From the NCBI RefSeq assembly GCF_021869535.1, contig NW_026262615.1:19096001-19160000 (forward strand): DNA of 64,000 nucleotides. Reading direction: 5' to 3'. Of this stretch, positions 1,368-56,560 are shown in pieces. This DNA is from Mytilus californianus (taxonomy: Eukaryota). The notes beneath the pieces were generated by a model, which was not told where the DNA came from, searched no databases, and was given only the letters and a program-made list of their open reading frames with translations. Made by a program: the position numbers and the translations under genes. Position 1 is the stretch's first letter, and every line of letters begins with the position of its first letter.

Positions 1368-1410
1368 ACGTTCGATGCGCATTTCTGAATTTACCTTCAA
1401 CAGGAATGCT
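1368..1410 (-). ncRNA. Degenerate hammerhead ribozyme, family C (A6U)
   Basis: Minus strand AGCATTC CTGTTGA AGGTAAATTCA GAAA TGCGCA T C GAACGT; palindromic stem III ATGCGCAT; core A6 mutated. Confidence 0.65.
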
Positions 1411-1713
1411 GAAACCAAATGATTTGAAAGCCAAGGATGTATAAATATTTGTATACTTGAGGAGCTACATGATAAGAATGGACAAAAAAATTATAATTGT
1501 AATAGTTTTCCACAAGCAAATAATAGATAATCTGATCTTCAAAAAAGAACATTACCAATCATGTATGAATTCAAAGAAAATCACAGGTTATCAACTCCCT
1601 AAGGCAAAGTTGATCATAGATGAATTTGGCTATTTGTTTTATGTATTTTTGTCATATAGCTCTTCAACTGTTTCGGTACTTATACATCCCTCGGATTTCA
1701 AATGTTTGGCTTT

Positions 1714-1757
1714 GAGCGTTCCTGATGAAGGTAAATCGAGAAAAGCGCTTCGGATGC
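1714..1757 (+). ncRNA. Minimal type I hammerhead ribozyme, family C (atypical stem II)
   Basis: GAGCGTTC CTGATGA AGGTAAATCGA GAAA AGCGCT T C GGATGC. Core CUGAUGA and GAAA are intact, stem III is the palindrome AAGCGCTT, stem I is GCGUUC/GGAUGC. Predicted cleavage after C1751. Confidence 0.75.
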
Positions 1758-1889
1758 ATGAAATTTTTAAACGTGTTGTTTTTAATTTTTTTATCTTTAT
1801 ATAGGTCAATCCTGACTTTCTTTCGAATAACCTTACAACGTATATTACCTCTCATTACATCATATAACATCATATGATGAGTTTTTTTT

Positions 1890-2185
1890 TCTGTCATGAG
1901 TTAAAGATTGGACTTTTGTTTATGTTCTCCCATTGATCTGGAAGTCAAACTATACTCACAGAATACGTCCGTTTGGGTGTGTGGGGTATATACATACCCA
2001 AACCACATTCCGTTGGAATGGGGACGTTACTCCGATGATAACAAAGGGAGCGTCTGTACTGTACTTTAGTCATCCCGCTTGACCAGCTTTGTATAACCTA
2101 CCTATTTGATTTAATGCTCTAGCCCTGAATATGCATGAAATATTTGCCACTTAATATATATTAATTAAACAATAATCAATCAATA
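1890..2185 (+). mobile_element. Probable retroposon 3' end
   Basis: Ends CCCTGAATATGCATGAAATATTTGCCAC...AACAATAATCAATCAAT with a simple-repeat tail; two short hairpins at ~1971-2023. Confidence 0.35.
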
Positions 2186-3119
2186 TTTCTTTGATAAACA
2201 TACTCGCTAACGTTAAAGAACAACAAAAACAACTTACGAACTGATATGGATTCACAACCGGAATATGGGATTGACATACTTGTTTTAGAGTTTAAGATAA
2301 GCAATAAGTGAATATATTAAAAAATAATAGGAATTACACATATGTAACACAACATCCTTCTATTTTGTCCGGCTTTTCATAACAAAAAATATCAAATTCA
2401 TATGAATGAATTATTTATAACACAAATGAACCAGCTATGGAACCAAACAATAACGAAGTTATCTGACCTTACACTTAATCCAAGTCAGACTCAATTTGAC
2501 ACAGTAGTCAAATGGTAAATTATTAACGAGATGAATGTCAGATACCGAAATGATCAAAGATCTAAAAACACCCCTCAATTAAAAAATCGCTTAAAAGGCA
2601 GTTTTCAGATCAGAATATGGTCACGTATGTATCGCCAATGACAGTTAAAACTTAGACTTATATACAATACACGTTTAAGTAATTTTCTACCATGTCAACA
2701 CAAATGGAAGCGTTATTGAAATGTCATTGAGTAAATTACGAATATAGCAAAATACGATTAACTCGTAGCTCTTAAATGGTTTGCGATCAATTTGCCATTG
2801 AATATTATTGGAATCAACTAATTAGGTCATTCTATTAAAATCATATACAGTTTGATAAGTAGAAAAGAACACTATAAGTTTAAACATATTTAGATATTAA
2901 ATGAGTTTGAGAAAGGGTACCAGATTCGTAAAAAAGATTATCAAAGATTGACATGTTTATCCAGGATACAGTGACATTATGAAAATCAGAGAAGAAAAAA
3001 GAAAAAAGAAAAAAAAGCTAAAAATATCTACTTTCGGACGTTTTTATTTTAGTATTTTAACATTACTGCTACACGTAATTACAATTTTATTCGATGATAC
3101 AAAGGGGCAGATCACGAGA

Positions 3120-3290
3120 TTTTAAAGAAGTTCAAAGAAGTCAAATGAGTCCTCATTTCTCTTCAACTTCTTATATCATTTGGCCTTTTTAACTTTTTTG
3201 ATTCGGGTGTCACTGATCAACCTTTTTGTTATACAAAATGCGATTCTTGCGTACATAATTTTAGTCCTGTTATTTATGGTGAGTTTATGT
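3120..3290 (+). mobile_element. Decayed family A retrozyme fragment
   Basis: GGGTGTCA CTGATCA ACCTTTTTGTTATAC AAAA TGCGATTC TTGCGT at 3205-3252, followed by the family tail ...TTTTAGTCCTGTTATTTATGGTGAGTTTA. Confidence 0.6.
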
Positions 3291-3632
3291 TGGACAAGCA
3301 AGTCTTATTCGCTAATGGACTTAGAAAATACAACTGCTTGTATTAAAACATATTCATAACTTCGACTTTAATGTATGCGATATATGACTTTACATGTCGT
3401 TTTACAAGGCAATAGCTTGCAAGGAAACATATTTGAAGCATATTTCGACTAATCCATAGGGAACTCGACTTCACGCTCGTCAGCAATAAAAATACTAGCT
3501 ACATATGAAATTTTGTATCGATCCTTTATTTGTCGAGTTTGTCACCTTTTTGGTAACCGAGCGTATAACTTTTCTAGAAATGTACTCTTGCTAAATAGGT
3601 AGATGACTATTGACAGCTATGGAATATAACTA

Positions 3633-4220
3633 ATAAGCTGTAGACTGAAATACCACATCAAATTGACAAAACATATTCAGTGTGATTCTAAGGCTTATAT
3701 CGGATTTAAAAATACGGTTCCATAGAAATTACAGTATCTCGTCGCATTCCTGTACGTGTGGTATCCTTGTTGCAACTCGTTCTGAGGTTTAGATCTTGAT
3801 TGAAAGAATTTCCATAAGCAGTTTCCAAAATGACATAATATGAGTTGGATTTATTTCCCTTTTAGTGATTTTGGAGGGAAAACTGGTTGATTTTCTTATT
3901 TGACTAACAGATTTTAAAACCTGTGGTACAAACAGGCTGCAGGTAAGATCAGAGAACGTTAATAGATCGTAGTGATATATCTTACAAGGCTTACACAAAC
4001 TAAGACAGTTCAGAATCAACTTTTTAATAAGTCGAGTGGTCAGTTCAACAAGTTGAATTTGGTTAATTTATTAGAAATATTACGTCAATCAAAAACGATA
4101 TTATTACATAATTGACTGAAAGATCTATTATCGAGTTAAATAGGTAGGAACTAATTCACCTGCATTTGTTACACTCACAGGGTCGAAATATAAACATTTT
4201 CAAATCTACTGGAATTTAAT
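3633..4220 (+). repeat. Dispersed direct repeat, copy 2 (probable DNA transposon remnant)
   Basis: Colinear with 1-620, with moderate divergence and small indels. Confidence 0.85.
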
Positions 4221-6934
4221 TCCATCAGATCAATATGTTATTCAACGCTACATGTTACTGTTGAAGGCAATTTTCTACGTCATTGCACATATAACAAGTT
4301 TTTAAAAAGAATTTGCAGCAAACGACGTCTCTAACCAACATGAATTGATGTACTTCCGATAGACAATTTACACTTACTTCCAATATAATTTTGGTTTTGT
4401 TTAAGCATGTCTTTTTCTTACATTTTCTTTTATAAGTACTAAAGACAATACCAACATCTGTCAAATATGCGGTTTAGGGCTATCCTCAGGCTTTTATAAA
4501 TTCTTCACCTGCTTAGAAAGAAGTCAATATATCTTACCGTTAGAACCTCAAAGTACATACAGGAAGTTGTGATACACCTTTGTTTTTAAAGATATAAACC
4601 GGAATTGATTGTACATGCGAATGTTATGCCATAGAAAATATAAATTATATTTAACTTGGGGGCATATCTTTTGGTAAAAATATCATATCTGCAGCAATGT
4701 AAATGAGTTCATACAAGGGCTTTAAATTTACTTGCAATCGTATTTACAAGTTTGCTGTCATATTTTGGAGTTATGTCATATTTTGTGAACAAGTACATAG
4801 CCACATTTTCTTTCGGTTTATTCGGTAGAACAAATAGGCAAGTGTTTTTAAAACATGTTAATGTAAAAATACCGTTACTAAACAATAAACAAAAAAAGAT
4901 AATTAAAGAATTCTATCAGCGTTTTAAAAAATCACTAAATGCACATTAAAAGCTTGGACAAATACATTGTTTAAAGTAAACAGTTTTGAAAATGGTTCTG
5001 ATGTTAAATACATTCTGGAGTAATTGTACAGAATTGAGAATGTTTTTATTCAGATTTCTGAAATTAAGACTTTTTAACAGAAACAACGATACGTGTATTG
5101 CATTAATGTGATTAGATAACTGTTCAAAGAACACAAGGTCAATAGTTCATATAATAACGTTCAATTCTGAACAGTTTATGAAAAAAGTAAGTTTTTCCAG
5201 CAAGGTATCGGTTAAACACTGTTTATTTGTATGTAAAAAATCTAAGTTTTCATTTAATAGTCTTATAGCATTTTCCATTTTATTGTATTTGCATTTCAAT
5301 TAATTGCTTATACACTGTTCTGTATTAAAAATAGACTAAATACATTCAACTTATTTTAGGATGTCTGTAGAAGGTCATACATATTTTTTAAGGTAATTAG
5401 GAAAAGAAGTATGTAATACTTTTGAAATCCATTCTTATTCATAGTAATGACGTGAACGTTCAATTCCACATTTCAAAGCTCAGATATAATGTAGGTTGAT
5501 ATTTGTTTACCCAACCGAAATACTTGATTTTAGCTCCAATATTTTATCAAGATAAACCATTGCGTATCCGTTTTTGTCTGACTACCCTGTTACACTCTTG
5601 CTTCAAGCTTGGATACGAAATACAATGTTAAGCATATTCAATTTGATTACAAAATGCTAATACATCATGGTTTTGTATTTGTATAGAAAGGTACGTGATT
5701 ATACGCTAGTCCCCATTAGGTGGTGGAGCTGCAAGGTGAAATAATTCCAAACCATGTACTAAATACAACATTTGCGTTTGACTAATTGCTTAAAATAATT
5801 GTAACAGTAGGCCTTTGAGTAAACGACCTGAAACTCTAATTAACATCCAATAATATCATCAATTATCACTTCGCCAGACATATATCTTAAATAACATGAT
5901 ACAAAAAAATGTTTTAAATTAAAAAATGACCTTGAACTTTAAATAATGACTCTATAATTTCAATTTAAACATCATATTCCGAATGCATATTGCTTAATAT
6001 ACCGTATACCACTTGATAAAGAATCATTACCGTCGACTAGGGAGTATAGTGTAGTGTCATTGATTACCGTATAAATGACAAACAATGAGAAGAGAGTTTC
6101 AATTAATGGTTATCTTGTATTTACCATACCGTAATGGAATAAGTACTAGAATCAATGATTCTAAATTAAAAGTTATCGAGACTAGGGGAATTGTTTGTTT
6201 GCTATGTCATTTATTATAAGTGTCACTACTGTCGATACAATATAGAGTTATGTCCCTTGGCGCGGCGGCTAACAAGTAAGTAGTATCTTTTTTCTATATC
6301 AATACTGTTTTAGCCTTACACAATTTAATTATTTTACAGTTAACTTGCGAACTAGTTATTTGGACTTCACATTGTACAGTGATATTGTCCAAATTTCATC
6401 AAAAGAAAAAAAATCGTCAGAAAATTTCTTTGAAAAGAAGACTGCCTTCAAGAGATTAAGAACTGTAAACGGATAAAAACACTAAACGATTTGTGTTAGA
6501 CATAAGAAAATAAACGATAAAAATACATATTGAAAAGTTAGCTTGAAATGAAAAAATCTGTTTTAAGAATAAAAAAAAAAAGGTTAGACAAAATTTGTAA
6601 GAGAAGGAGGGTAAACGACAAAGTTAATATGTCAAACTCCAAAACAAATCAAGGTGAGATTCATCTGCAGTGGAATTTGATTCCAGCTCAAGAACTTTTA
6701 ATGTTTCTTGTAATGGTTAGAAAATACATTAAATAACACAATTACAACAAACCCAATTTTATATTCAATTTTTAGAAATTTACCTGTGACGTTACTTTTT
6801 GTGGCGTTGATACACTCGTGTGACGCACAGTTCATAATTTTATTGTGGATTACTGGTGTACTATCGTAAACAAATGGGAGGTGTCTATTGTTATTCTGTG
6901 GTTTACATGTTGTTATGTACTATTATATTATTTA

Positions 6935-7312
6935 CTTTTGTATTTCACTGTCCTGAGTGTTCTTGCGTTTATTTGTACTGTATTCCTGTCACGTAATGTT
7001 GTCATTTTAGCGGTATTTGTAACATTGCCATATAAGCGGGAGGTTAAGCTAGCCATAAAACCAGATTCAACCCACCATTTTTTTCTTAAAATGTCCTGTT
7101 CCAAGTCAGGAATATGGCTGTTGTTATCAAATAGTCCGTTTCTATGTATGTTGGCGTTTGTTTTTGTAGCAGTTCGGTGTTTCTGTTGTTCTGTTGTTTT
7201 CATCTTATAGGTGATGTGTTTCTCTCGGTTTTGATTTGTGACCCGGATTTGTTTTTGCTTAATCGATTTATGACTATTGAACAGCGGTAAACTACTGCTG
7301 CGTTTATTCATA
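6935..7312. repeat. Interspersed repeat family F; inverted partial copy at 38140-38350
   Basis: GAACAGCGGTA(A/T)ACTACTG(C/T)TGC(G/C)TTTATT terminus and ACCCGGATTTGTTTT shared; contains CAACCCACCATT...CCAAGTCAGGAA. Confidence 0.75.
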
Positions 7313-8787
7313 GTAAGCTTCACCAGTACGTCGTGGTTTCAAATCAAGTACGAACATCCTTATATGTTCAAAACAAAATTCAGCCGCAGTAGAATTGAAT
7401 TGAAAATTAAGAATAAAATTGAGAATGGAAATGGGGAATGTGTCAAAGAGACAACAACCCGACCATAATTGAAAATTAAGAACACTGTTTAATGCTAGAT
7501 TATTTAAAATCATATACACATTGAATACGGAACTTCTGATCAAAGTAATATCAAATCAATCTTGTTAATGTCTTTGTATAAAAGACATAATTTATTCAAT
7601 TCAGAAAAACTGATAACCCAATCGATCCCGAGGTTGAACCAGAATAAAGAAATATTTTTGCCTGGACCTCCGACCTAGTACTCAAACCAATGATGTTTTT
7701 CGTTAATCTGTAGTAGGATGTTAAAATACGCTACCATTACCATTCGGAATAGGGGTTGAAATACAATACACCCTGTAGGAAAAGTGTTACGTTTTCTGGG
7801 CTTTAAAGATTTTAAAAAAAAAATCGCTGCCAAAATAGTCTGCTTCTATCCAACTCTATCACCTGTGTTTGTCGAAATTTACCGTCTCTTTTCACGGTCC
7901 AACTACTTCAAAGAGTCATGCATCTACCTATTGAATACCGTAATCGTAAATAAAAAAAGAAATCCTTTTTAGTATACTTGCATTTTTGTTAAACCTTTTT
8001 AATCACATAAAGGAACTATTATGTCAAAGGCGTCTGCTTACTTGTACTTAACCTTTGAAGAGATTCAATTCAGAAAGCTTGTACGAAACGGCTACAAGGT
8101 ATCAATTTGATGATATTGAAGTCTAATTACTTTTTCTAGGAGTAATTCAATTTCCGTTCTGTGTAGCACGTCAGTTTTCTGTCAACGCTGTCGTCAACAC
8201 TACTACCAAAATCCTTCTAATAAGATTAAGTAAAATCAGGCAATCTACAGACATACAGCAGCAGAAATGCGATTTTCATTAAGAAAAAAAGAAGCCAGTT
8301 TTAAGTAAAGGCATAGGATACAATAGCGTATTATTATTTTTCAAGATTCCGTCTTGAATAACAAATTTGTAGATATCCATAAAACCTTTTGAAAGTCAGT
8401 ATAATATATAAATCAATTCTTAGTGAACCTCCAAATGCTTTTTTTAATTGATAGTATATATGGTTTAAAATGTTGACAAATTACTTTTTTTCAAGGTAAT
8501 GCGATTGAACTCTTTTTTAAAAGATTAGCGCGAAGACATCAAATATATACAATATTTTACATTTGAATAGAATTAACATATTGAACATTTTAAGCATTTT
8601 ATTTTTGTTCTACTCAAGGCCACTGATTGAACATTTTTCCATATTTGATTTGGCTTATGAATAATGTTTCATTGAAAAGTATTGGAAGTAAGACATTGTT
8701 TTAATGTATGTAAATAGGGTAATGCAATATACAACTAATTGTCATGAATAAAATTAGATGTAGCGACAACAACCAAACGATGCACAT

Positions 8788-9116
8788 AAGATGGTCTGTA
8801 TGGGGATCCTTAATGGCTATTCTTTAAATTTTTAGAGCATTTTTCTTTATGTTTAAAAATAAAGCTTATTCTGTAAATTTCTCATGAAAATGATTTTACT
8901 GTTGATTTTTTTCTGTGGTTATAAGATGTTTTAATCTGTACATCATTCATTTCTGTAATCTGTAATTTTATTACCTTATTCTTTTATTTTCCACAGTATT
9001 CTTTATAATTTTGCATTCCAATATTTTCTATTCTTATTTTTTTGCTCATTTTTCTTCACTCATTTTTTTTTTTGCCATTATTGTCTTTTCTGTAAACCTC
9101 AACCAGACCCTCATAT
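8788..9116. mobile_element. Decayed copy of the 23955 MITE family (opposite orientation); further decayed copies at ~11012-11197 and ~57010-57196
   Basis: Ends ATGGTCTGTATGGGG...CCAGACCCTCATAT; internal TATTCT/TTTTCT-rich repeats. Confidence 0.55.
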
Positions 9117-10124
9117 AAACGATAGACACTTAAAAGTCAACAATAGACAGATGTCCTTATAATATGGTACTAGTGAACACGTAAATTGACTTCTATATGT
9201 CGTTGGGTTATTGTCTTGCTTATGTATACCAAACTGAGCATTTTATTCTATAAGGTGTAAGTAGAAAAGAGCCCAAAAGAACCAAGAGGACATTCAAAAT
9301 TCATAAGTAAAAGAAAAACAAACAACGGCTTGAGTAAAGGGAAACTGACAACGGCATGAGTAAAAAACGAAAAATGACGAAAAAACAAACAAGCCCATTA
9401 AACATTACAAAGAAATCTAAAGAGTGAGCAATACGAACCCCACTAAAAAACTGAGTTATCTACCGAGGTCCGTGATGATTAGCAGATTCTGCTCAAAATG
9501 TGTAATATTGGAACCATGTACAAAAGAGTTCTATGGAATAACATTAAAATTTGCTATCTTGTCTTCATTTGATTTTCTTGACTTATTTATTGTTAAATAT
9601 CAATTTCAGAGATATCATAATTTATTCTCAAGTGGAATATGTCTATTATTTTTTGCCAGTTATAGATTATTACTAATGAATATAGAAAGCTTCGCAAAAA
9701 GAATCGTGGAGTACCCTTCTGGCTGCTTTAATACTGTTACGACATGTGTTGAAGTCATTATGAACTGTTTGGACTTCTCTACTCTGTATACTGCCCGACC
9801 ACATATTGTTTCTATTAAAATGGTCTTTTGATGTAACAGTATCTGTTGAAGACGTTACAATTTTGTTTAAGAATATGTAATATAAAACATTTTGGAGTAA
9901 ACCGTTAAGTTAAAGGTATTCCAATTGGGACTATAACTGTTGCCATTCTATCGTAGAGTTGTTCCTTTACTGTGTGTATTTCCAGTTTATCTCATATAGG
10001 TCCAACGAAACACAACGTGACATTGAATAATACCTTCAGACGTTTAGGCATTATTATTATTCTTTGTTAACAAGCCATAATTTTTCTAAATATAAAGCGC
10101 TCGACTGCAATCTTAATTGACTAA

Positions 10125-10260
10125 GAATGTCAGTTTTCCTACCGAAGGTCGTTGGTTCTCTCCGGGTACTCCGGCATTCTTCAACAATAAAAACTGACCG
10201 CCACGAAATAGCACAATAGTGTTGAAAGTGGCGTTAAGCACAAAATAATCAATATCAATC
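10125..10260 (+). mobile_element. SINE remnant (conserved central domain and 3' tail)
   Basis: GGTTCTCTCCGGGTACTCCGG...AATAAAAACTGACCGCCACGA...TTGAAAGTGGCGTTAA followed by a (CAAT)-like tail. Resembles metazoan Meta/V-domain SINEs, recognised from memory. Confidence 0.55.
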
Positions 10261-10932
10261 TACATATGAAATTGATACATACTATCTATCCTCCATATAT
10301 ACCAAAGCGTACGCTAAGTTCTCGGGAGGCCTCTATCAGACTTTAAAATTAGATTAGCATTTCTTTTATTTTCGTCCCAGTTTTCTCTACAATCTATCCA
10401 CTGAAGAGCCGTCAATTTAGGTCAGATTAATTGAGTAATATCATTAATACAGTGTCACGCGATAAAATGTCATGTAAATTTGTCTGTTTATTGACATTAT
10501 TACAAACTATAACACAGCTCAGAGTATTAATTAAACATACTATATGTCATAAATCACTGTGAGAAGATTCATATTATGTAAATGATTATTTCTGCTTTAA
10601 TATGAAAAACAAGCAATGCAAATACTGTCAAAACATTAAAACAAACTAACCAACTTTAGTAAAAACATAGAATTGTTGTGCACAGGGATTTTGTTATGTG
10701 GGGTATACATTAATGAAACTGCAAACAAAACCCCACAATAGACATATAGCTAGTTGCTGACACGATATTTCAAAATTAAACTAAAAACACTGTTCTTTCA
10801 TTAAATAAAAGAACATTTTTGGAACATGCTTTAAGTGTTAAATACGGTAGTTGCATGCAAAGCAGTATTCGTTACCCTCTTTAACTTTCAGTTTAAATAA
10901 ACTCATCATAGATACCAGGATTGAAAATGTGT

Positions 10933-10977
10933 ACGCCAGACGCGCGTTTCGTCTACAAAAGACTCATCAGTGACGCT
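10933..10977 (-). ncRNA. Intact minimal type I hammerhead ribozyme, family A
   Basis: Minus strand AGCGTCA CTGATGA GTCT-TTTGT-AGAC GAAA CGCGCG T C TGGCGT. Perfect core, 4-bp stem II, palindromic stem III ACGCGCGT, 6-bp stem I, GUC triplet. Predicted cleavage between 10939 and 10938. Confidence 0.88.
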
Positions 10978-13788
10978 GGAAGCAAAAAATTTAAAAAATT
11001 CGAAAGAGTATTTATGGGTTCTGGAAAAAGGGAGAACGGATCATTATATCTGTATGATGACATTTTCTCTATTGTATATATTTTGCAAATGATTTTTTTT
11101 TTATTTTAACATCCCCATTATTCTCTATTACCTATTTTCGTTGCCCATTTTAATTTTATTTTCATCATTCTCATTTCTGAAAAGCCTATCATGACCCTGT
11201 TATTTAAGACTTTGAATTGCGAAAGATTTATTTGATCAACAAAGATGTCAAATAGGCAACACAAAAGCGACATGAAAATTTGAAGACATCTAGAGGTCAA
11301 CCTACAACCATCGGCAAAAGACAAGAGTATACAATATGCCAAATCGTTCGTACCTATGTAGACCCTTTTGCCAGTTTGTCTCTATAGCTTTTTGTTGCTT
11401 TTGATGTTTGTAATTTGTGTATTGCTTCATATATATAAATGTATATAAGATTTTATTCCTAAAAGGAAATTAGTTGGTTTAGTATATATTTGTGGGTTTA
11501 ACTAGAGGTGCAGGAACTGACGGCTCTTACTAAGCTCCTGAGGTCACATCGGTTTATGATAGGTACATGTTGCTCAATCTTTAGTATTCTGTGTAATGTT
11601 TTTTTTTTTGTCGTTTTTTTCTTTTGGTCATTACGTCGTCTGTTATTTTTATCGTTATTTCTTTTGACCATTATGCTGTCTGTTTTGTTTTCGTCGTTTT
11701 TTTCTTTTTGCCATTATGTTGTCAGCTTTGTTTTCGATCTAATAGTTTTAAACGCCCCCTTAGTGTCCCGCCTCTTTACATTGGAATCAAATTGAAATCA
11801 GCTATATGCAAAGTACAAACAGGGTATTCTCTGCTTCTCAAATTGATCTATAGATGAGGTGTAAACAAGAATTTGAATTTTATCATAATGCAATAAGCGA
11901 ATGGAATAGGTTACCTGATGCCTTAAAAGAAAATGAGAGTCTAATGTCTTTTAACAGGGAAAAAGAATTTCTAGACGAAACAGGCAAAAACGATTCCATC
12001 ACGGATGTATACTTTATTAGTATATTGATACTTATAATGTGATTGATGTAGTCTGTCAGTTCTGTTCGTTTTTAGTAGACTAAAACCTTTAAGTCATGCA
12101 AATCTTAATTGAAAATAAAACCACAGGCGACTTAAAAATATACGTTATCCTTAGGAAATAAATTAAGATATAACGTATACATAAGGGAATGAAAGTTATC
12201 TTTCTTCCAACAGGAAATCTGATAATACCGTGTATAATCAGACACTAATGTACATATATAGATAACGTAAAATGATTAAAACCACCAATTCATGGCCCTT
12301 TGCTTTCTATGTAAAATTCTGCTATTACAAGAATTCACAGCTATTTTGTCTTAAAAGTTTAAATAAAGTGACAGTCATTAAATGTTAAAACTATACTTTT
12401 CCTAAATGTAGCCCGCTTAAGAAATATATTGAACATACTTTTAATTGCATTTAGGATAGCACTGGTTCCTGAAATTTTAGTTATACAGAAACAGTAGCAT
12501 TTGATCCGAGCAACAGGCAAACTATGCCCTCCTATTTCAGTTAAGTTTATTTTTTATGATTGAAAATGGACTGTAAACAATGCGTCTACAATGATTTGAA
12601 GTCACCATTCTTTCGTTTGATATGAAAAAATAACCATATATATTACTTATTTACAAAGTTACAGGAACTACTCTGTGTACGCCGTGTTCTACTATGTACT
12701 CCTTTCGTACAAGTTTCTTTTGACCGGGCCAGAACTAATGGTTCTTTACCATAAAATGACCTAAGTGAGAACTGAAAAACTCTTCCATGGAGGTTTGCCG
12801 TCATGGAATTTAACGAGATACTTCCGTTAAGCATCAATGAGAATAAAATGGAGCTAATTCTTCTAGTATACATTAGAGTTTTGTTTTTTTTTTCGAATTG
12901 TGTAAAACACCTGTAGTTGAACGTTAGTTTTGTCAAACCGCTTGTTAAACCACTTGTCCAATCATCTTTACAAATGGTGTATAAATCGCTTAATAAGAGC
13001 CTGTAGATACTAAAGATGACATTCAAAATCATAAATCGGAGAGAAACTGACAACCCCATGTAAAAAAAGAAAGACGAACACAAGTCCACAAAACACTGCA
13101 TATAAAACTAAAGACTGAACAATACGAACCCCACCAAAAGCTGAGGGTTATCTCAGATGATATCATACTGTATACGCCCACTTGCATTTATACATATATA
13201 TAACATTAACGGGTTAAAATCTAAGCAAAATTTATTCAAAATAGATATCAACACTTTGGAAAGAATTTATGATTTAGGAACATTGTATATATATATAAAT
13301 AACCCTTTGACATATCACCTGATAATCAAATTCTTTGAAATATTTGGCTTTTTATTGCAAGATAAGATCGATTCTATCTGTATATCTCTCGCCGTTCAAG
13401 GATTCAAAACATGATGGTATCGATGTACATGTAGCTGTTTGACTCAGACGAGACGTTGACCATCATCAACCAATCGGTCAAACTATATGATAAAAGATGC
13501 CATTTTAATTGTATTAATGTAATTGTCCCGTTTAGAGCAGGAACATGCAAGCATCCCAATCGTTACTTGTATTTGTGTGTCAATTCTTTTGTACACAAAT
13601 ATATTACCAGATCATTAGGCAGCTAGAAGATGTTGGTTGACATAACATCAGTATTTGGCAGATAATATTATGCTTAGCCCCTAGAAAATGCTTGGTCTGA
13701 AACTGAATAGGTAATTTTATTATTAATCTCTCGCGTATTCCGACGCGACATTAATTGTCAAAATGCGCATCTTTTGCAGTGAAAAGAG

Positions 13789-16814: not shown

Positions 16815-17390
16815 TTTAACGTACAAATTTAAGTGCACTAGATGCACATTTCGACAATTAATGTCTTTCAGTGATGCTCGAGGGCAGAATATTAGAAAGT
16901 TCGAAATCTAATACAAACATTGAAGAGCTGATAAAACAAGAAAAGGACCAAAGTAAAGCCAAACCCGGAATAGAAATCAGTGAACAAAATCCGTATTTTT
17001 ATGCCAGTAAAGAAGTGTTGGCAACTGGGTTGGTTATAATCTCGGGGACTAACAATCAACAAATTTTATTTTAAGTTAAGGGGTATCATATTGGAGTATT
17101 TATGCCTCGTACCATTAGGAATTATTCCCTATTTGTACCGATTCACTTTCATAAAGTGGGAAGATGGCGTTATACCACTAACTAATAATTACATTAAATG
17201 GTACCAATGTTATTGCACCAGATACGCATTTCGACAAATAATGTCTTTTGAGTGACTCTCAAAGCTAAAATGTTTGAAACATTCAAGAAAAACCGTCAAG
17301 AAATCAGAGTTTTGCATGAGAAAGATACATCCCGTAGTGTCAAATGATTTCCTGCTTTTATAACAGTAAATGTCAATCATATAATATCCG
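16815..17390 (-). mobile_element. Decayed family B retrozyme, ~380-nt period, two inactive HHRs (16835-16879, 17215-17260)
   Basis: Two copies of the GACA/TGTC-GAAA-TG(C/T)GYATC motif lie 380 nt apart, with cores CTGAAAG (1-nt deletion) and CTCAAAA. The internal sequence is homologous to 54906-55310. Confidence 0.7.
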
Positions 17391-22889: not shown

Positions 22890-23290
22890 AAACAACACAA
22901 TTGCATGCGTCCTAAACTCTTTACTAGATGTACCTTCATCAGAAACTCTCAAAGCCGAATATTTGAGAGCCAAGGATGTATAAGAACCGAAACAATTGAA
23001 GAGCTATATATCAAATTAATTCGTAAAGAAATACATGAAAAGCAACGAAATAGTTATGCAATGTTTCTACCTTTAGTGTGTTTTTCTTTAGGCAAACCCC
23101 TTTTTACCCTTAATGTAGTCATAAATGAAATTTGTAGAAACAAGGAAAAAAAAGCATACAATTTAAAATCATGCTTATAAATTAAATTAACTTTTTATAA
23201 TTAAATTTGTTTCGTTCGACATGTTTTTGGATTTACCTTTATCAGGAACACTCAAAGCCATACATTTAAAACTAGGAGGTATAAATAATT
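22890..23290 (-). mobile_element. Decayed family C retrozyme dimer (~300-nt period)
   Basis: TACCTTCATCAGAAACTCTCAAAGCC at 22931 and TACCTTTATCAGGAACACTCAAAGCC at 23234, i.e. minus-strand CTGAT(G/A)AAGGTA cores. Confidence 0.6.
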
Positions 23291-23299
23291 ATAAAAAAA

Positions 23300-23410
23300 A
23301 TCAAAGATACCATGCATTTCATTTTGAACGCAAGAAGCGAATCTCTTCTACAAAGAACTCATCAGTGACACTCGAATGAAAAATGTTGAAAGGCCAAAAA
23401 AAATATGAAA
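23300..23410 (-). mobile_element. Decayed family A HHR fragment
   Basis: Minus strand GAGTGTCA CTGATGA GTTCTTTGTAGAA GAGA TTCGCTTC TTGCGT at 23328-23373. Confidence 0.55.
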
Positions 23411-26181: not shown

Positions 26182-27610
26182 TTGTATATATTTTAATAGC
26201 AATGGGACAATAAAAACAAACTTAACATTTATCGACTTTTTACTTTATGTTGTTCATTGCCATTTAGAGCTGCTATGTAGTCCAAAATCAGATCAGACAC
26301 TACATCAATAGCTCATGTTTTAATGAATGGCTCACCGTCGTGAGATGTGAAATCTGCCAAAATCTGCTACACATTACATTTAGATGAAAATTAACGTTAA
26401 AACCAAGAACTTTTTTTCTGTGAAGCTTGCATATGTCTTTTTCTATTATTATATGAATTCATTTCTATTTAAAATATACGGAAATAGGTCGCTGAAAAGT
26501 AGTTTTCATCCTAAAGTTGCATTCGAAGTTCCAAAATGTGCAACACGGAAAACTGAGTTCAGGGTTTTGAGAAATCAGAACACTGTGGACGGCTGATTCT
26601 GTGAGCTTGAAACAGATAAATGTAGCGAAAGAACCTTCCTTGTATACATGTTAGGACATATCTACCTAAATGCAAGCAATAAGTTGGAAGCACTTTTTTC
26701 TTCATGTAACGTTCATTAGGACATATTATAAAAGTATTTATGCGTTTAATTTTCAACTTGTTGCCGGAAAACAATTTTTTGGCGAAAAGACTATCCACGG
26801 AAAGAACAATAATTTGGTTCGACCTTGTAAGCATCATGTGTGTTCAGCATACCAGAAATAACTGAATACCTTATTGAAAAAACAATGCAAAGCTGAAATG
26901 TTTAATTGAAAAAATTGTTATGTCTACGTCATTCCTTATTCAATTTATGACATAAGTAAATGGTCGGTACCTTTGATCCGTCTTGAAGTTTATCATTTTG
27001 TAACAATAAAATTGAAGATGAAGCCGATAAAACATAAAAGAGCATTATATTAGTTCAACAAAATTTCGAAAATACGTTGCATTTGTATTGCATTCTAAAG
27101 CGATAAAACTTTATATGATAGCATGTAAAGCTATAAAACGAACATGTAAAGACAGGTGAACGTCTCGATATCAGTAAGTTATTTTTAGGAAATATTCATC
27201 AAATCATGTTTCGTGCTTGTAAAACTTTAATTATAAAGAAATAGTTTACAATTTAGGACAGTGTCCTTCTCCTGCACCTTTAAGGAAGTCATATCATGGA
27301 TTTGGACAAGGAAAGCCTTAATGTTGCCATAAAATTGACTTTGTGATATAACACATCAACTAACTAATGTTTACAATCTAAGATTTGAAAATTTAGTTTG
27401 TCTGCAGTGTCTTTAAGAGTCAATAGTTTCAAAAATAAAAAATACAACAAAAATACCGAACTCCAAGGTAAATTTAAAAAATCCATAAAAAACTGACAAA
27501 ATCAAACGTTAGATTTTGTCAACGGAACGAACGGAAAACAAATGTCATATTCCTGACTTGGTAAAAGCGTTTTTGTTTCCGAAAATAATGATGGGTTAAA
27601 CGTAGTTTTA

Positions 27611-28102
27611 CCTTTTGGAATTTTGGGTCCTCAATTCTCTTCAACTTTGTACTTGTTTGGCTTTATAACTATTTTGATCTGAGCGTCACTGATGTGTCTT
27701 ATGTAGACGAAACGCGCGTCTGGCGTATTAAATTATAAGCCTGGTACCTTTGATAACTATTAACACCACTGCTGTTGGACGTTTCGTCCCCGAGGGTATC
27801 ACCAGCCCAGTAGTCAGCACTTCGGTGATGACATGAATAACAATTATATGGTCATTTTTATACATTTCCTGTTTACAAAAGTATGAATTTTTCGAAATAC
27901 TAAGGATTTTCTTATCCCAGGCATAGATTACCTTACCGTATTTGGCACAACCTTTTGGAATTTTGGGTCCTCAATGCTCTTCAACTTTGTACTTGTTTGG
28001 CTTTATAACTATTTTGATCTGAGCGTTACTGATGAGTCTTATGTAGACGAAACGCGCGTCTGGTGTATTAAATTATAAGCCTGGTACCTTTGATAACTAT
28101 TT
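27611..28102 (+). mobile_element. Family A non-LTR retrozyme: 340-nt monomer between two tandem HHRs
   Basis: HHRs at 27681-27726 (A9U at 27695) and 28021-28066 (core intact). Predicted cleavage after 27720 and 28060 gives 340 nt. 27611-27761 is directly repeated at ~27951-28101. Inserted at a TTTA site within another repeat. Confidence 0.85.
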
Positions 28103-41689: not shown

Positions 41690-41780
41690 GACCTTTTCAC
41701 CTTTTTGATATGAGTTATTTGTAAACGATACGCGCGTCTGGCGTACGAAATTATCAGCTTGGTATCTTTGGTGAGGTTTG
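41690..41780 (+). mobile_element. Decayed family A HHR fragment
   Basis: GATATGAGTTATTTGTAAAC GATA CGCGCGTC TGGCGTAC followed by the tail CTTGGTATCTTTGGTGAG. Confidence 0.6.
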
Positions 41781-45924: not shown

Positions 45925-46207
45925 CGTTTCACTTAGACAAGATACTAAAAGAAGGGCGAAAGATACCAAAGGGACATTCAAACTCATAAAATAAATTGAC
46001 AACGCCATGGCTAAAAAAGAAAAAGACAAACAGACAAACAATAGTACACAAAACACAACATAGAAAACTAGAGACTGAGCAACACGAACCCCTCCAAAAA
46101 CTGGGGGTAAGCAGATCCTGCTCCACATGTGGCACCCGTCGTGTTGCTCATGTTAGTACACACACGGTAATAAGTCTAATTCGGTAGATCACATTCGGGA
46201 AAAGGGG

Positions 46208-46380
46208 AAAAGATTCATCAGTGACGCTCAAATAAATCTATTTAAAATGGCCAAATAAGTACTACGTCGAAGAACATTGAGAACTCTACATTCCCAAAGG
46301 TATTGCCAAATACAGCTAAATTATCAATTTCTGGGGTATAAAATCCTTTGTATATCGAAAAGTTCAAAGTTTTGTTTTTT
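46208..46380 (-). mobile_element. 5' part of the split family A retrozyme
   Basis: Contains minus-strand GAGCGTCA CTGATGA and upstream monomer sequence (GCCAAATAAGTAC...GCCAAATACAGCTAA) homologous to 56420-56560. Confidence 0.7.
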
Positions 46381-47280: not shown

Positions 47281-47536
47281 TACATGGTAGAACTGTCAGA
47301 ATTTGTTACATGGTAGAACTGTCAGAATTTGTTACATGGTAGAACTGTCAGAATGTGTTACATGGTAGAACTGTCAAAATTTATTACATAGTAGAACTGT
47401 CAGAATTTGTTACATGGTAGAACTGCCAGAATTTGTAACATGGTAGAACTGTCAGAATTTGTTACATGGTAGAACTGTCAGGATTTGTTACATGGTAGAA
47501 CTGTCAGAATTTGTAACATGGTAGAACTGCCAGAAT
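47281..47536 (+). repeat. 26-bp minisatellite, ~10 copies
   Basis: Unit TACATGGTAGAACTGTCAGAATTTGT; an isolated unit lies at 46962-46984. Confidence 0.93.
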
Positions 47537-49739: not shown

Positions 49740-49785
49740 ACGCTAGATGCGCGTGTCGTCTTCATAAGACTCATCAATAGCGCTC
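49740..49785 (-). ncRNA. Degenerate family A HHR with compensated stem I
   Basis: Minus strand GAGCGCTA TTGATGA GTCT-TATGA-AGAC GACA CGCGCA T C TAGCGT; core carries C3U and GAAA>GACA. Confidence 0.65.
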
Positions 49786-53797: not shown

Positions 53798-53841
53798 GAG
53801 CATTCCTGCTGAAGGTAAATCAAGAAAAGCGCTTCAAACGC
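53798..53841 (+). ncRNA. Degenerate family C HHR in the KCNQ intron (sense orientation, A6C)
   Basis: GAGCATTC CTGCTGA AGGTAAATCAA GAAA AGCGCT T C AAACGC. Confidence 0.65.
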
Positions 53842-53940
53842 GTGAAGTTTATCAAGGGTTATTTTCTTACATATTGTTTATTCTACAATCTTCCACAATT
53901 AAAGAAGGTACTCCTATTTTCAGGGGCATAACACCGAAAA

Positions 53941-54159
53941 TTGAAAATGTGTCCATAGGACAACGATGATGCTCCCGCTTGCATAAAACGTTATAAAGTG
54001 GCATAACTCGAGAACGGCAAAAAAAGCATTGTGTATTAGTTTCATAACATGTGTTTAAGGCACACTAAACTTAGATAACGTAAACCTTTTTGGGAGGTAC
54101 GTACGGACGGACAAGGGTAACACTTAATGCTCCCTCTGATGACAGCGGGGGCATAAAAA
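53941..54159 (+). mobile_element. Helentron-associated (HINE/DINE-1/pearl-like) non-autonomous element
   Basis: Subterminal inverted repeat ATGCTCCCGCT / AGCGGGGGCAT, a (GGAC)n-type microsatellite at ~54100, and a 3' stem-loop ATGCTCCC...GGGGGCAT followed by an A-run. Confidence 0.65.
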
Positions 54160-54905
54160 TTACTGATACGTTTTGTCAGTCTTTTCATTAATTTTTGGAA
54201 TCTAGTAACACAGATTACTTTTGTTATTTCTTTACAAGAATGCTAAAAAAGCATTGATGAAACTGATTTTCACAAACGCAGCACCGATTAAAAGATTATC
54301 TCCTACTACCCAAAACTACCCCTTAAACGACAATAACACTTTTTGATATTTCTGTTATAAGTGTGCAATGAAGCTTTTAAGAATTCGAAGTCATCACGAC
54401 ACTTAAAAAATTACATGTTATGTAAAAGCCATACAAATTGACATTTGCTCTGAATACATTTTAAATGCCTCAATTAATTTGAAAAAACACATTCAATTTC
54501 CGGTTACAAGCATCACCAAAGCTCTCGATGTTATATGTAATCTCCGAATGTCACTCTAGCCTTCAAGATATTAGATTAGTTAAAATAATATCGAGTAATG
54601 TTGATATGAATTTTATGAAAAGGGATATAAATTGGCTTAGATTCTTCGAATTTTGACAGCTGCACTAAGATACATTGACGCGTATTTAAATAAATTGTAT
54701 AATTAATTGAACCGATTAATACTAAAACGACAGCATAAGAATAGTATATCATGTGTATGTAAATATTAGAATTAGAAATTATTACCAAGCGAAATTTACA
54801 CTGTCCTAGAACATCGATAAACTACAGTGTCTCCTTAGATTGAATTGGTGGATGATTACTGAAATTTTTGCTAATATACAATAAAATTGTATTTGTCCTT
54901 TGCTT

Positions 54906-55310
54906 TAATAACATAAACGGTACCAATTTTTCTGCACCAGATGCGCATTTCGACAATAAATGTCTCTTCAGTGATGCTCGAGGCCAAAATATTTGAAAAT
55001 TCAAAGCATATTAAAAAGATGAAGAGCTATAAACTAAAAGGGACAAACAAGTAAAGCCAAAGCCGGGCAAGGAATCAGAGCTTTGCATGAGGGAGATACA
55101 TTCCTTAATTTTAAATAATTTTCAAAATTTTGTAACAGCAAATTTTAATAACACAAAATCCGTGTTTTCATGCCAGTACCGAAGTACTGGCTACTGGGCT
55201 AGTGATACCCTCGGGGACTATCAGTTCACCAGCAGAGGCATCGACCCAGTGGTAGCAATAACAAAAACGGTACCATTTGTTCTGCACCAGATGCGCATTT
55301 CGACAATAAA
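54906..55310 (-). mobile_element. Family B non-LTR retrozyme, 350-nt period, one complete and one 5'-truncated HHR
   Basis: AACGGTACCA...TCTGCACCAGATGCGCATTTCGACAATAAA occurs at ~54916-54960 and ~55266-55310 (offset 350). Confidence 0.85.
54934..54979 (-). ncRNA. Intact minimal type I hammerhead ribozyme, family B
   Basis: Minus strand GAGCATCA CTGAAGA GACA-TTTAT-TGTC GAAA TGCGCA T C TGGTGC. Core intact, stem III ATGCGCAT, 6-bp stem I, AUC triplet. Predicted cleavage between 54940 and 54939. Confidence 0.88.
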
Positions 55311-56349
55311 ACTTTTCTAATATAATATTAGAGCATAAAACATATGTATTGTCTATATCAAAGAGGTACATTTTTAGCTTAACAGCAATATACAGTTTAT
55401 GGTACTTTACCTAGTCTTTCTACGATATCACTGTAGGTGGGTCTGATTTCACGGTAAAAAACTGGTGATTGAGTGTTGTTCGCAATAAATAAAACCAATG
55501 GTGGGACATCAGCCTTTTCATTTGCAATTGTTTACTTTTTAAGAATCAATGCTTCCTGAATCCATCGCGGAAATGAATTCACTAAATGATGTTTAATTGT
55601 TTCCTTATTTTGCTTAATTTTATAAAGTTTGAATTGGCTATTTTGTGTTAATTCTTTGCATTGACGGAATTAATTTGACAACCTACCTTCGGCTTTTGTC
55701 GGTTTTTTTGCCATCACTTATATGATATATCATAATGTTCAAAATATTTCATTTTATATGAGGACAAAAACTGGATTCTATTAAAGAAGGACTTCTAATG
55801 TGCCGTCAGTTATCATTTCTAAGAACATATATGTTAGTTTTAAAAATAAACTATACATATTCTAATGAATCGCGCTGCTAGCTCATGGTATCTTTTTAAC
55901 GAACCAACGCTTATCCATCGTTTCTCCTTTATAAATTCTATAGATATAAAATTCCAGTCGCAGGGTAAAGTGTTCACCAGCAATTAATCTGTTTCCCTGT
56001 TGTTCACTCCATCCCAATATAATTATATTACTAGAACATAGTTCAAGATATTATATATCATAATGAATAGCTCATTCAATATATTTACTAATTAATAGAG
56101 CAAACAATGATCTTATCAATAATTTAATTAACATATACCGAGTATAAATGATTACTCATCAAACCAGATCAAACAATAGCTACATTTGTATCGTAAAGAA
56201 AATACTTATATACCGAGGCGTAATGATTAGAATTCACTGATGCGATCTCGAGAAAATACATTTAATGAAAAGATGAAGAAGACAATATTCAAAACGGAAA
56301 CTGATGAGTCGATTATCGTTTTGTTATTTGATACTCGGTAAATTACAGA

Positions 56350-56560
56350 TAAATTCATCATAGATACCAGGATTAAAATGTTGTACGGCAGACGCGCGTT
56401 TCGTATACAAAAGACTCGTCAGTGACGCTCGATTGAAAAAAAGGCCAAATTAAGTACGAAGTAAAACATTGAAGACTCAAAATTTCGAAAGGTTTTGCCA
56501 AATACAGCTAACTTAAAGTAATATATTTCTTGGGTAGACAATCTTTAGTATTTCGAATAA
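56350..56560 (-). mobile_element. Family A retrozyme fragment with HHR 56385-56430 (core intact, stems with single mismatches)
   Basis: Minus strand GAGCGTCA CTGACGA GTCT-TTTGT-ATAC GAAA CGCGCG T C TGCCGT, plus the tail CCTGGTATCTATGATGA. Confidence 0.75.

What the first reader, a model, noticed from the sequence alone, without database searches (positions are those of the whole stretch)
1368..56430. Dense population of minimal hammerhead ribozymes (retrozyme system) in three covarying families
About 20 motifs read as type I HHRs: stem I, CUGANGA, stem II, GAAA, palindromic stem III, NUH, stem I. Between families the unpaired core is conserved while all three stems change compensatorily. Stem II is GUCU/AGAC vs GACA/UGUC; stem III is ACGCGCGU, AUGCGCAU, AUCCGGAU or AAGCGCUU; stem I is GCGUCA/UGGCGU vs GCAUCA/UGGUGC. 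This pattern indicates selection on RNA catalysis and is invisible to the ORF track. Established knowledge: minimal HHRs with palindromic stem III occur in Penelope-like elements and non-LTR retrozymes, cleave as dimers, and have been reported to give abundant circRNAs in metazoans including mussels. Three distinct families co-occurring at about one motif per 3 kb is what merits follow-up; whether families B and C are catalogued is unknown to me.
Basis: partly seen in the sequence, partly recalled or inferred. Interest (0 to 1): 0.88.

Follow-up and report, generated by a model that had tools for sequence, protein, structure and literature searches.

The report
Hammerhead retrozyme relics in mussel
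The window holds about twenty, mostly decayed, copies of small non-coding mussel jumping elements (retrozymes) that each carry a self-cutting hammerhead RNA motif; one family is already proven to cut and form RNA circles in mussels, and the other three are relatives I could not find described, one with an unusual second stem.

Summary
A covariance model finds 13 full-length hammerhead (HHR) motifs (E <= 2e-6) and 2 partial ones, and BLAST adds 5 relics, all between 1368 and 56428. None is expected by chance, and the density is about 9 times the genome average.

They are insertion copies of non-LTR retrozymes of a Mytilus genome. There are four families, not three.
- **A:** its 44-nt HHR is identical to the published M. 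galloprovincialis retrozyme Mg353, which self-cleaves and gives circRNA.
- **B and C:** about 350-nt sister families of A, homologous over the whole unit (62-65% identity).
- **D:** the 'AUCCGGAU variant' belongs to a separate, far more abundant ~539-nt family, which this scan has already met on other DNA.

The unpaired core is invariant across families, while 7 of 14 stem pairs changed on both sides and stayed paired.

Only 4 of the 20 motifs are fully intact, and no locus has two intact ribozymes. The window is therefore a graveyard of 5'-truncated insertions, not a circRNA factory.

Family C replaces the G10.1-C11.1 pair with A.A and has a 2-bp helix II; whether it cleaves is untested. The one RNA run showed A and C sequences in RNA but no cleavage ends, even for A.

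Verdict: a known kind of element, with new members.

The parts
1368..1409 (-). Family C relic; core CUGUUGA (A6 to U), stem III of B type (AUGCGCAU)
   Evidence: CM 38.6 bits, E 8e-8; sequence; 77% identical to the C unit over 1374-1479
1591..1791 (+). Family C insertion copy (unit positions 193-353 plus 1-40). Its HHR at 1716-1757 has an intact core, but stem II reads AGG/CGA, a single pair.
   Evidence: 94% identical to the C unit; CM 52.3 bits; parse
10894..10995 (-). Family A insertion copy, 102 nt. Its HHR at 10933-10976 is fully intact and identical to the published Mg353 HHR.
   Evidence: Rfam 32.5 bits; CM 68.8 bits; parse; published sequence
13734..13777 (+). B-type relic: stems II and III present, 5' core lost, G12 to A
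   Evidence: Partial CM hit 13747-13771, E 0.003
16835..16877 (-). Family B HHR with a 1-nt deletion in CUGANGA; dead
   Evidence: CM 40.9 bits; 80% identical to the B unit
17215..17258 (-). Family B HHR with core CUCAAAA; dead. It lies 381 nt from the previous motif, in an old partial dimer.
   Evidence: CM 35.7 bits
19625..20049 (-). Family D (~539-nt unit) insertion copy (unit positions 454-537 plus 1-364), flanked by (TA)n. Its HHR at 19960-20003 is fully intact, with stem III AUCCGGAU and cleavage triplet AUA.
   Evidence: 84-96% identical to the D unit; CM 62.2 bits; flanks
22907..22948 (-). Family C relic (GUA in place of GAA, stem III decayed)
   Evidence: CM 15.5 bits
23210..23251 (-). 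Family C relic (core CUGAUAA, 3' half lost)
23328..23371 (-). Family A relic, heavily decayed
27610..28102 (+). Family A copy of about 1.4 units. The upstream HHR 27683-27726 is dead (A9 to U). The downstream HHR 28023-28066 is intact, with a wobble-rich stem I.
   Evidence: 152-nt direct repeat at 97%, 340 nt apart; Rfam 29 and 28.3 bits; CM 61.3 and 65.2 bits
32240..32541 (+). Family A copy produced by the tandem segmental duplication of 27803-32200. Its HHR 32462-32505 is dead (G12 to A).
41701..41744 (+). Family A relic: 5' half degenerate, GAU in place of GAA
   Evidence: Partial CM hit
46184..46227 (-). Family A relic: stem I and core kept, 3' half replaced. The copy body lies at 46208-46375.
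49740..49783 (-). Family A HHR, dead (C3 to U, A14 to C)
   Evidence: CM 37.8 bits
53800..53841 (+). Family C HHR, dead (A6 to C; stem II AGG/CAA)
   Evidence: CM 33.3 bits
54906..55310 (-). Young family B copy (95% identical to the B unit): 27 nt of an upstream HHR, one full 350-nt unit and a 34-nt tail. HHR 54934-54977 is fully intact. The upstream motif (55284-55310) is 5'-truncated and dead.
   Evidence: CM 67.4 bits
56349..56566 (-). Family A copy (unit positions 185-362 plus 17-45). HHR 56385-56428 has an intact core and one mismatch each in stems I and II.
   Evidence: CM 60.2 bits

Best explanation
The motifs are the hammerhead ribozymes of non-autonomous, non-coding non-LTR retrozymes of a Mytilus genome. 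They are present in this window as about 19 independent insertion copies of four families, most of them old and 5'-truncated. Family units are A 354-369 nt, B about 349 nt, C about 353 nt and D about 539 nt.

The life cycle below is known for family A from the literature and is inferred for B, C and D. Tandem master arrays elsewhere in the genome are transcribed. Each hammerhead cuts after its NUH triplet (GUC, AUC, UUC or AUA), possibly helped by pairing of two motifs through the 8-nt palindromic helix III. The unit-length RNA is closed into a circle by a host tRNA-type ligase. A Penelope-like reverse transcriptase then copies the circular or multimeric RNA from a fixed start and often stops early.

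That fixed start lies about 34-48 nt past the cleavage site in A, B and C, and about 364 nt past it in D. The result is exactly what lies in the window: copies that contain the uncut junction, share a 3' end and differ in their 5' end. Once inserted the copies decay neutrally. Four of 20 still have an intact ribozyme, and no locus has two, so none can release a monomer on its own. Selection for the ribozyme fold acts on the master lineages, which is why families differ by compensatory stem changes around an invariant core.
For: Shown here:
- Motifs are real and non-random.
- Family A's 44-nt HHR is identical to the published, self-cleaving, circRNA-forming Mg353 retrozyme. The published primers also match family A.
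- Exact-pattern copies in the genome: A 3,437, B 873, C 2,352 (3,020 with stem II left free), D about 13,000. Reversed-pattern controls gave 0.
- Tandem periods are A 362-369, B 348-350, C 351-356 and D 536-541 nt. The TTATG-loop half of A has a period of 354-358 nt.
- A, B and C units align over their whole length at 62-65% identity, and 93-95% within a family.
- Units have 34-40% GC and no ORF above 80 aa.
- On 16 sequences, 95.8% of cells are paired against 78.4% in shuffles (0 of 500 shuffles reach it). Seven of 14 pairs changed on both sides. Slid controls give 20-46% paired.
- All unpaired core positions are invariant.
- Copy ends: A at unit positions 42-48, B at 34, C at 37-40, D at 364, with variable 5' ends and some copies longer than one unit.
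- The window has no RT or endonuclease ORF.
- RNA reads of run X21 cover an A copy and a C copy at 50-185x per orientation, against 0-2x on most unique flanks.

From the literature:
- Cleavage and circRNA for family A, ligation by RtcB-type ligase, and PLEs as the proposed mobiliser (PMC7229834, PMC7761336).
- Derivation of vertebrate retrozymes from PLE pseudo-LTRs (bioRxiv 10.64898/2026.07.22.740005).
Against: - No cleavage or circularity was shown here for any family. The single true RNA run showed no pile-up of read ends at either predicted site. RNA depth scaled roughly with genomic copy number, and another repeat in the same stretch was covered as deeply. The proven family A was equally silent, so the run (an RNA-Seq cDNA library) is uninformative rather than negative.
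- Family C lacks the G10.1-C11.1 pair (A.A instead) and has only two G-C pairs in helix II, so it may be inactive.
- Within families no compensatory variation was seen, only one-sided changes.
- The reverse transcriptase partner is not identified for A, B or C, and no clear target-site duplications were found.
- Rfam's own threshold is narrowly missed (32.5 against 34 bits).
Confidence: 0.85

Rival explanations
1. The motifs are the minimal hammerheads of the pseudo-LTRs of autonomous Penelope-like elements (PLEs). On this reading the window holds broken PLE copies rather than retrozymes.
For: PLEs carry type I hammerheads in tandem pseudo-LTRs and co-exist with retrozymes in mussels (PMC7229834, PMC7761336). 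GIY-YIG endonuclease elements are abundant in this genome (1,480 candidates). Retrozyme copies lie beside some of them.
Against: The window has no ORF above 152 aa and no RT or endonuclease domain. BLAST of 30 endonuclease loci against the window returns only their retrozyme passengers. The motifs sit in 350- or 539-nt non-coding units that form their own tandem arrays. Family A is the published retrozyme. Helix III here has 2 bp plus a tetraloop, unlike the PLE-type motifs described as lacking helix III.
Confidence: 0.05
2. Only family A is a working ribozyme. On this reading B, C and D are retrozyme-derived satellites or SINE-like repeats whose hammerhead is a catalytically dead passenger. 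Their sequence uniformity would reflect recent amplification rather than selection for catalysis.
For: Family C has A.A in place of G10.1-C11.1 and a 2-bp helix II. Within-family variants are all one-sided. No read ends fall at the predicted C site. The monomeric hammerhead fold is not the predicted minimum-energy structure for any family.
Against: A, B and C bodies differ by 35-38%, yet all ten unpaired core positions are unchanged. Every stem change between family masters is compensated, apart from the A.A of family C. That outcome is unlikely without selection on the fold in each lineage. B and D have fully canonical cores and 4-bp helix II. For B and D the predicted dimer minimum-energy structure is exactly the double hammerhead. 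The axolotl HHR_Amex2 has a U.U mismatch at the base of helix II and still cleaves, efficiently as a dimer (PMC7229834). The read test was equally silent for the proven family A.
Confidence: 0.1
3. The motifs are chance matches to a short degenerate consensus in AT-rich DNA.
For: The loosest pattern (CTGANGA, 6-30 nt, GAAA) gives 10 hits against 3.6 expected, and one shuffle in 100 reaches 10.
Against: With stem III included, shuffles give 0.00 expected against 5 observed. The CM E-values reach 1e-15. The flanks are homologous to 350- or 539-nt repeat units.
Confidence: 0

Closest known systems
Mytilus galloprovincialis non-LTR retrozyme (construct Mg353; 'HHR A' and 'HHR B' of Cervera & de la Pena, Nucleic Acids Res 2020, PMC7229834)
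   Same: Family A's 44-nt hammerhead is identical to that of Mg353. Unit size of about 350-370 nt, low GC, tandem arrays and thousands of copies all match. The published divergent primers match the family A ribozyme and tail. Their two variants are described as differing only in loops 1 and 2 and in upper helix I. That fits the two loop-2 subfamilies of A seen here (UUUUG, and UUAUG with 1,507 of 3,437 copies).
   Different: Families B (stem II GACA/UGUC, stem III AUGCGCAU), C and D have different stems. They do not fit the published description of two near-identical variants. The published circRNA cloning used family A-specific primers, so these three families are untested. The window copies are truncated insertions, not arrays.
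Axolotl retrozyme hammerhead HHR_Amex2 (same paper)
   Same: It has a mismatch at the base of helix II (U.U there, A.A in family C) and a 2-bp helix III capped by a tetraloop. It self-cleaves weakly as a monomer and efficiently as a dimer.
   Different: It is from a different phylum and has a different sequence. Amex2 keeps three G-C pairs in helix II, while family C keeps two. Activity of family C is unknown.
Minimal type I hammerheads of Penelope-like elements and Terminons (Cervera & de la Pena 2014; Lunse, Weinberg & Breaker 2017; cited in PMC7761336)
   Same: Type I topology, tandem arrangement, proposed action as dimers, and association with PLE machinery.
   Different: Those motifs lack helix III beyond the conserved nucleotides and sit in pseudo-LTRs of coding elements. 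Here helix III is an 8-nt palindrome (2 bp plus tetraloop as a monomer) and the elements are non-coding.
Rfam Hammerhead_1 (RF00163)
   Same: Family A aligns end to end with the consensus, including GUC...GAC for helix II and ACGCGCGU for helix III.
   Different: The best score is 32.5 bits against a gathering score of 34. Families B, C and D are not detected at all by the Rfam model.

Membership tests
Hammerhead ribozyme, type I | Conserved core: CUGANGA, GAAA, and an NUH cleavage triplet with H not G | tested here: met
   Present in the family forms of A, B, C and D. In the window it is intact in 6 of 20 motifs and mutated or truncated in 14.
Hammerhead ribozyme, type I | Three helices around the core with helix I open, supported by covariation | tested here: met
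   95.8% of cells paired against 78.4% in shuffles (0 of 500). Seven of 14 pairs changed on both sides. Slid controls give 20-46%. Exception: family C helix II is A.A plus two G-C pairs.
Hammerhead ribozyme, type I | Score at or above the Rfam RF00163 gathering threshold (34 bits) | tested here: not met
   Best score is 32.5 bits, for the copy identical to an experimentally active ribozyme. The threshold is therefore too strict for this lineage and is not evidence against membership.
Hammerhead ribozyme, type I | Site-specific self-cleavage | not testable with these tools
   For family A it is published for the identical sequence, at about 0.1 per min (PMC7229834). For B, C and D there are no data. 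Laid reads showed no ends at the A or C sites.
Metazoan non-LTR retrozymes | Short tandem repeats (about 170-400 bp), each with a type I hammerhead | tested here: met
   Genome arrays have periods A 354-369, B 348-350 and C 351-356 nt. D at 536-541 nt exceeds the published size range. The window holds only partial dimers (27610-28102, 54906-55310, 16835-17279).
Metazoan non-LTR retrozymes | Non-coding, low GC (below 45-50%), no LTR, PBS or PPT | tested here: met
   GC is 34-40%. The longest ORF in a trimer of any unit is 80 aa. PBS and PPT were not searched for.
Metazoan non-LTR retrozymes | Expressed as unit-length linear and circular RNA | tested here: inconclusive
   A and C sequences are covered 50-185x per orientation in RNA run X21, against 0-2x on most unique flanks. 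Depth is in proportion to DNA copy number, and there are no ends or back-joints. For B, only runs guessed to be RNA hold 10-26% of its words. CircRNA is published for family A only.
Penelope-like element (autonomous) | RT plus GIY-YIG endonuclease ORF next to hammerhead-bearing pseudo-LTRs | tested here: not met
   The window has no such ORF or domain.
Dimer-dependent (double) hammerhead | Weak helix III whose loop is self-complementary, so that two motifs form one extended helix III | tested here: inconclusive
   All four families have an 8-nt palindrome (ACGCGCGU, AUGCGCAU, AAGCGCUU, AUCCGGAU). Positions 15.2/16.2 and 15.3/16.3 covary. The double hammerhead is the predicted dimer minimum-energy structure for B and D. 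It lies within 1.4 kcal/mol of that minimum for C and 5.1 kcal/mol for A. Against this, a single-repeat family A construct is reported to cleave.

The most novel reading that the evidence does not exclude
Family C (about 3,000 copies, with its own 353-nt arrays) may be a working natural hammerhead in which the near-universal G10.1-C11.1 pair is replaced by an A.A mismatch and helix II is cut to two G-C pairs. It would be active only as a double hammerhead, held together by the 8-bp palindromic helix III that all four mussel families preserve. That palindrome is kept even through the two-sided GCGC to CCGG change in family D. Families B and D also share one ~90-nt ribozyme cassette on unrelated bodies, so the ribozyme module may move between retrozyme lineages.
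Probability: 0.4. Interest if true: 0.5.

Novelty: new member of a known kind. Interest (0 to 1): 0.35.

Why it matters
Retrozymes are the main known source of ribozyme-made circular RNA in animals, and the mussel is one of the three species in which they were demonstrated. This window shows that the mussel repertoire is wider than the single sequence family characterised so far.

Two ~350-nt sister families (B and C) and a much more abundant ~539-nt family (D) carry hammerheads with fully re-paired stems. Such a set is a natural mutagenesis series for the hammerhead fold. It also offers a direct test of two questions: whether a hammerhead without the G10.1-C11.1 pair works in vivo, and whether the palindromic helix III means obligatory dimer cleavage.

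The result also corrects expectations. A dense field of hammerhead motifs in an intron-like region is mostly dead insertions. Counts of 'ribozymes' taken from motif searches therefore overstate the number of active loci.

Tried and rejected
- **Rfam at gathering thresholds:** no hit. The family sits just under the threshold.
- **Fuzzy-regex scan:** timed out and was replaced by blastn-short and a covariance model.
- **RNA evidence:** the run search found only one run on record as RNA, X21. Reads laid on L011:1200-3700 gave coverage of an A copy and a C copy, but no begin or end pile-up at positions 1972/1973 or 2777/2778 and no back-joints. Both orientations were equal, and another repeat at 1284-1535 was covered as deeply. 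This gives no support for cleavage or circles. Because the proven family A behaved the same way, it is not evidence against them either.
- **Target-site duplications** around seven window copies: none convincing, apart from (TA)n on both sides of the D copy.
- **tRNA-like origin of the conserved central block:** ARAGORN finds nothing in A, B, C or D arrays. Rfam in E-value mode finds nothing there.
- **fold_alignment of the central block**: I used badly chosen coordinates, so the result is uninformative and is not used.
- **Autonomous partner:** 30 GIY-YIG loci were scanned. D copies abut the 3' end of two different endonuclease-bearing element families. Both D and one of those families end in (TA)n, which suggests a shared target preference. 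No partner was found for A, B or C.

Full report

Rfam with curated thresholds reports nothing in the window. With E-value reporting, the type I hammerhead model RF00163 hits four places. The best is 10933-10976(-) at 32.5 bits, just under the 34-bit gathering score. blastn-short with the three consensus motifs and inspection of the oriented sequences recover about 20 sites between 1368 and 56428.

I built a covariance model from 16 intact copies and ran it unfiltered over the window.
- It gives 13 full-length matches with E <= 2e-6, seven of which were not in the training set.
- It gives two partial matches.
- Five more relics are recognisable only by homology to the repeat units.

A stricter core pattern matches 5 times, against 0.00 in shuffles. 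The same pattern occurs 14,480 times in the 1.65-Gb genome, with 4 in the reversed control. That is 0.56 per 64 kb, so the window is about 9-fold enriched.

**2. State of the copies**

Parsing each motif into core and stems gives these classes.

| Class | Motifs |
|---|---|
| Fully intact | 10976 (A), 28023 (A, wobble-rich stem I), 54977 (B), 20003 (D) |
| Core intact, stems broken | 1716 (C), 56428 (A) |
| Core mutated or truncated | the other fourteen |

Examples of the damage are A9 to U at 27683, G12 to A at 32462, a 1-nt deletion at 16877, and a 5' truncation at 55284-55310.

The two loci that look like complete units are 27610-28102 and 54906-55310. Each has a dead upstream ribozyme, so no locus in the window can release a monomer by double self-cleavage.

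The motif at 32462 lies in a tandem segmental duplication (27803-32200 against 32240-37183, 94-96.5% identical). It is a copy of 28023, not a separate insertion.

**3. What the elements are**

Earlier notes of this scan say the genome is a Mytilus mussel. Supplementary Table 2 of Cervera & de la Pena 2020 (PMC7229834) gives the cloned genomic retrozyme Mg353 of M. galloprovincialis.
- Its hammerhead and cleavage site are identical over all 44 nt to family A.
- The rest of the construct visibly matches the family A unit.
- That construct self-cleaves at about 0.1 per min.
- The family gives abundant circRNA on northern blots.

Exact-pattern searches of the window's own genome give the following counts, with 0 in all reversed controls.

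| Family | Copies | Tandem period (nt) |
|---|---|---|
| A | 3,437 (1,507 with loop 2 UUAUG) | 362-369; 354-358 for the UUAUG half |
| B | 873 | 348-350 |
| C | 2,352 (3,020 with stem II left free) | 351-356 |

Units cut from arrays align over their whole length. Identity is 93-95% within a family and 62-65% between A, B and C. A central block of about 100 nt is much better conserved. Units are 34-40% GC and have no ORF above 80 aa. A, B and C are therefore sister families of one retrozyme lineage.

**4. A fourth family**

The 'family B variant' with stem III AUCCGGAU at 19960-20003 is not a B copy. Leaving the four inner bases of the stem III palindrome free (G or C) raises the genome count from 873 to 13,935. 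Nearly all the additional matches read AUCCGGAU followed by A, with a tandem period of 536-541 nt.
- The body of this family D does not align with A, B or C.
- Only about 90 nt around the ribozyme resemble B.
- The window copy spans 19625-20049 and ends at unit position 364, as do two other D copies.

Earlier follow-ups of this scan described the same ~537-544-nt family on other pieces of the genome. This part has therefore been found before by the scan.

**5. Covariation**

I tested the three-helix structure on 16 distinct sequences of the four families.
- 95.8% of cells form standard pairs, against 78.4% in column shuffles (0 of 500 shuffles reach this).
- Slid controls give 20-46%.
- Seven of 14 pairs carry changes on both sides: three in stem I, two in stem II and two in stem III.
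- Most unpaired cells come from a MAFFT misalignment of the shorter family C stem II.

The unpaired core (CUGA-GA, GAA, and the A15.1-U16.1 pair) is invariant. The hammerhead is not more conserved in sequence than the rest of the unit: by my count A and B differ at about 13 of 44 positions. The differences fall in stems, where they are compensated, and in loops. That is the signature of selection on fold.

Few lineages are involved, so the number of independent events is small. Within family C the variants are all one-sided, as expected for neutral decay after insertion.

**6. Helix III and dimers**

All four families keep an 8-nt palindrome. As a monomer this can only form 2 bp plus a tetraloop, which is how the published work draws invertebrate helix III. 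Two observations hint that two motifs pair.
- The change GCGC to CCGG in family D alters both partners of a pair that cannot form within one hairpin.
- ViennaRNA predicts the double hammerhead as the dimer minimum-energy structure for B and D. It lies within 1.4 kcal/mol of that minimum for C and 5.1 kcal/mol for A. The monomeric hammerhead fold is never the minimum-energy structure.

Against an obligatory dimer, a single-repeat family A construct is reported to cleave, and the review states that invertebrate motifs cleave as monomers. Dimer action is therefore an inference.

**7. Family C**

Its genome-wide form is CUGAUGA, then A-GG-UAAAU-CC-A, then GAAA. This means A.A where almost all hammerheads have G10.1-C11.1, followed by two G-C pairs.
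- The window copy at 1716 has lost one of those two pairs.
- The closest precedent is axolotl HHR_Amex2, with U.U at the base of helix II. It is weak as a monomer and efficient as a dimer.
- Family C kept every core nucleotide and compensated its stem I and stem III changes while its body diverged by about 37% from A and B. I therefore think it is more likely active than not, but this is untested.

**8. How the copies arose**

Window and genome copies end at a fixed unit position and begin at variable positions. Some exceed one unit: 493 nt at 27610-28102 and 405 nt at 54906-55310.

| Family | Fixed 3' end (unit position) |
|---|---|
| A | 42-48 |
| B | 34 (one exception at 112) |
| C | 37-40 |
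| D | 364 |

Every copy contains the uncut or religated cleavage junction. This fits reverse transcription of a circular or multimeric RNA from a defined start with frequent early termination. It is the model proposed in the literature with Penelope-like elements as the likely enzyme source.

The window has no RT or endonuclease ORF. In a sample of 30 GIY-YIG loci, D copies abut the 3' end of two different endonuclease-bearing element families. One of those families and the D copies both end in (TA)n. This suggests a shared target preference. No partner was found for A, B or C.

**9. RNA**

Only one run on record as RNA was available. Laid on a stretch holding one A and one C copy, its reads cover both at 50-185x per orientation, against 0-2x on most unique flanks. 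Three things limit the result.
- Depth tracks DNA copy number.
- An unrelated repeat in the same stretch is covered as deeply.
- There is no pile-up of ends at either predicted site.

The proven family A is equally silent, so the run cannot decide. Contigs of runs with another species label also hold A and C sequences, so both families are shared within the genus.

**10. Verdict**

- there are four families;
- family A is already published;
- family D was already met by this scan;
- most copies are dead;
- the label 'minimal, dimer-cleaving' is not established for these motifs.

B and C are new members of a known kind, and C is a moderately interesting structural variant. I built no consensus of whole elements and used individual genomic copies throughout.

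Noticed in passing
window 27803-32200 and 32240-37183: Tandem segmental duplication of about 4.4-4.9 kb (94-96.5% identical). Its junction lies inside a family A retrozyme copy, so the hammerhead at 32462 is a duplicate of the one at 28023.
   Followed up: partly
units of A, B, C (e.g. window 27766-27843, 55150-55250; unit positions about 45-140): A central block of about 100 nt is much better conserved between A, B and C than the rest of the unit. It includes a hairpin capped by UUCG, with changes on both sides of the stem between families. It starts right after the fixed 3' end of insertion copies, so it may be the site recognised by the reverse transcriptase. It is not tRNA-like by ARAGORN, and Rfam finds no family there.
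   Followed up: partly
L022 / L058 and L047 (own genome, C110:18.35 Mb and C121:97.87 Mb): Family D copies lie directly after the 3' end of two different GIY-YIG endonuclease-bearing element families. One of these, a very young family (about 99.6% identical copies, about 3.9-kb tandem period), ends in (TA)n at several insertion sites. The window's D copy ends in (TA)n too.
   Followed up: partly
window 44470-44649 and 45658-45871: Two arrays of a palindromic 20-bp unit (TTTGCGTTATAACGCAAACC and its variant), about 1 kb apart. They cause spurious microRNA-like Rfam hits, and another note on this window calls them a foldback-like transposon.
   Followed up: no
window 58600-59358: A 41-bp tandem repeat with 18.5 copies at 95% identity. 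Window 47280-47536 holds a further 26-bp tandem repeat (9.9 copies, 93%).
   Followed up: no
L011:1200-1535 (own genome, C1:20.77 Mb): An unrelated high-copy repeat is covered by RNA reads as deeply as the retrozyme copies, with consistent loose ends at 1330/1332, 1391 and 1501. It is probably another abundant transposon.
   Followed up: no
own genome C35:19226789-19226968 (+), 67 kb beyond the window end: An exon encoding the KCNQ channel C-terminal domain (92.7 bits).
   Followed up: partly
window 1368-1791: Two family C copies lie in inverted orientation about 300 nt apart (1374-1479 minus, 1591-1791 plus). The older one carries a B-type stem III (AUGCGCAU) on a C-type stem II.
   Followed up: no
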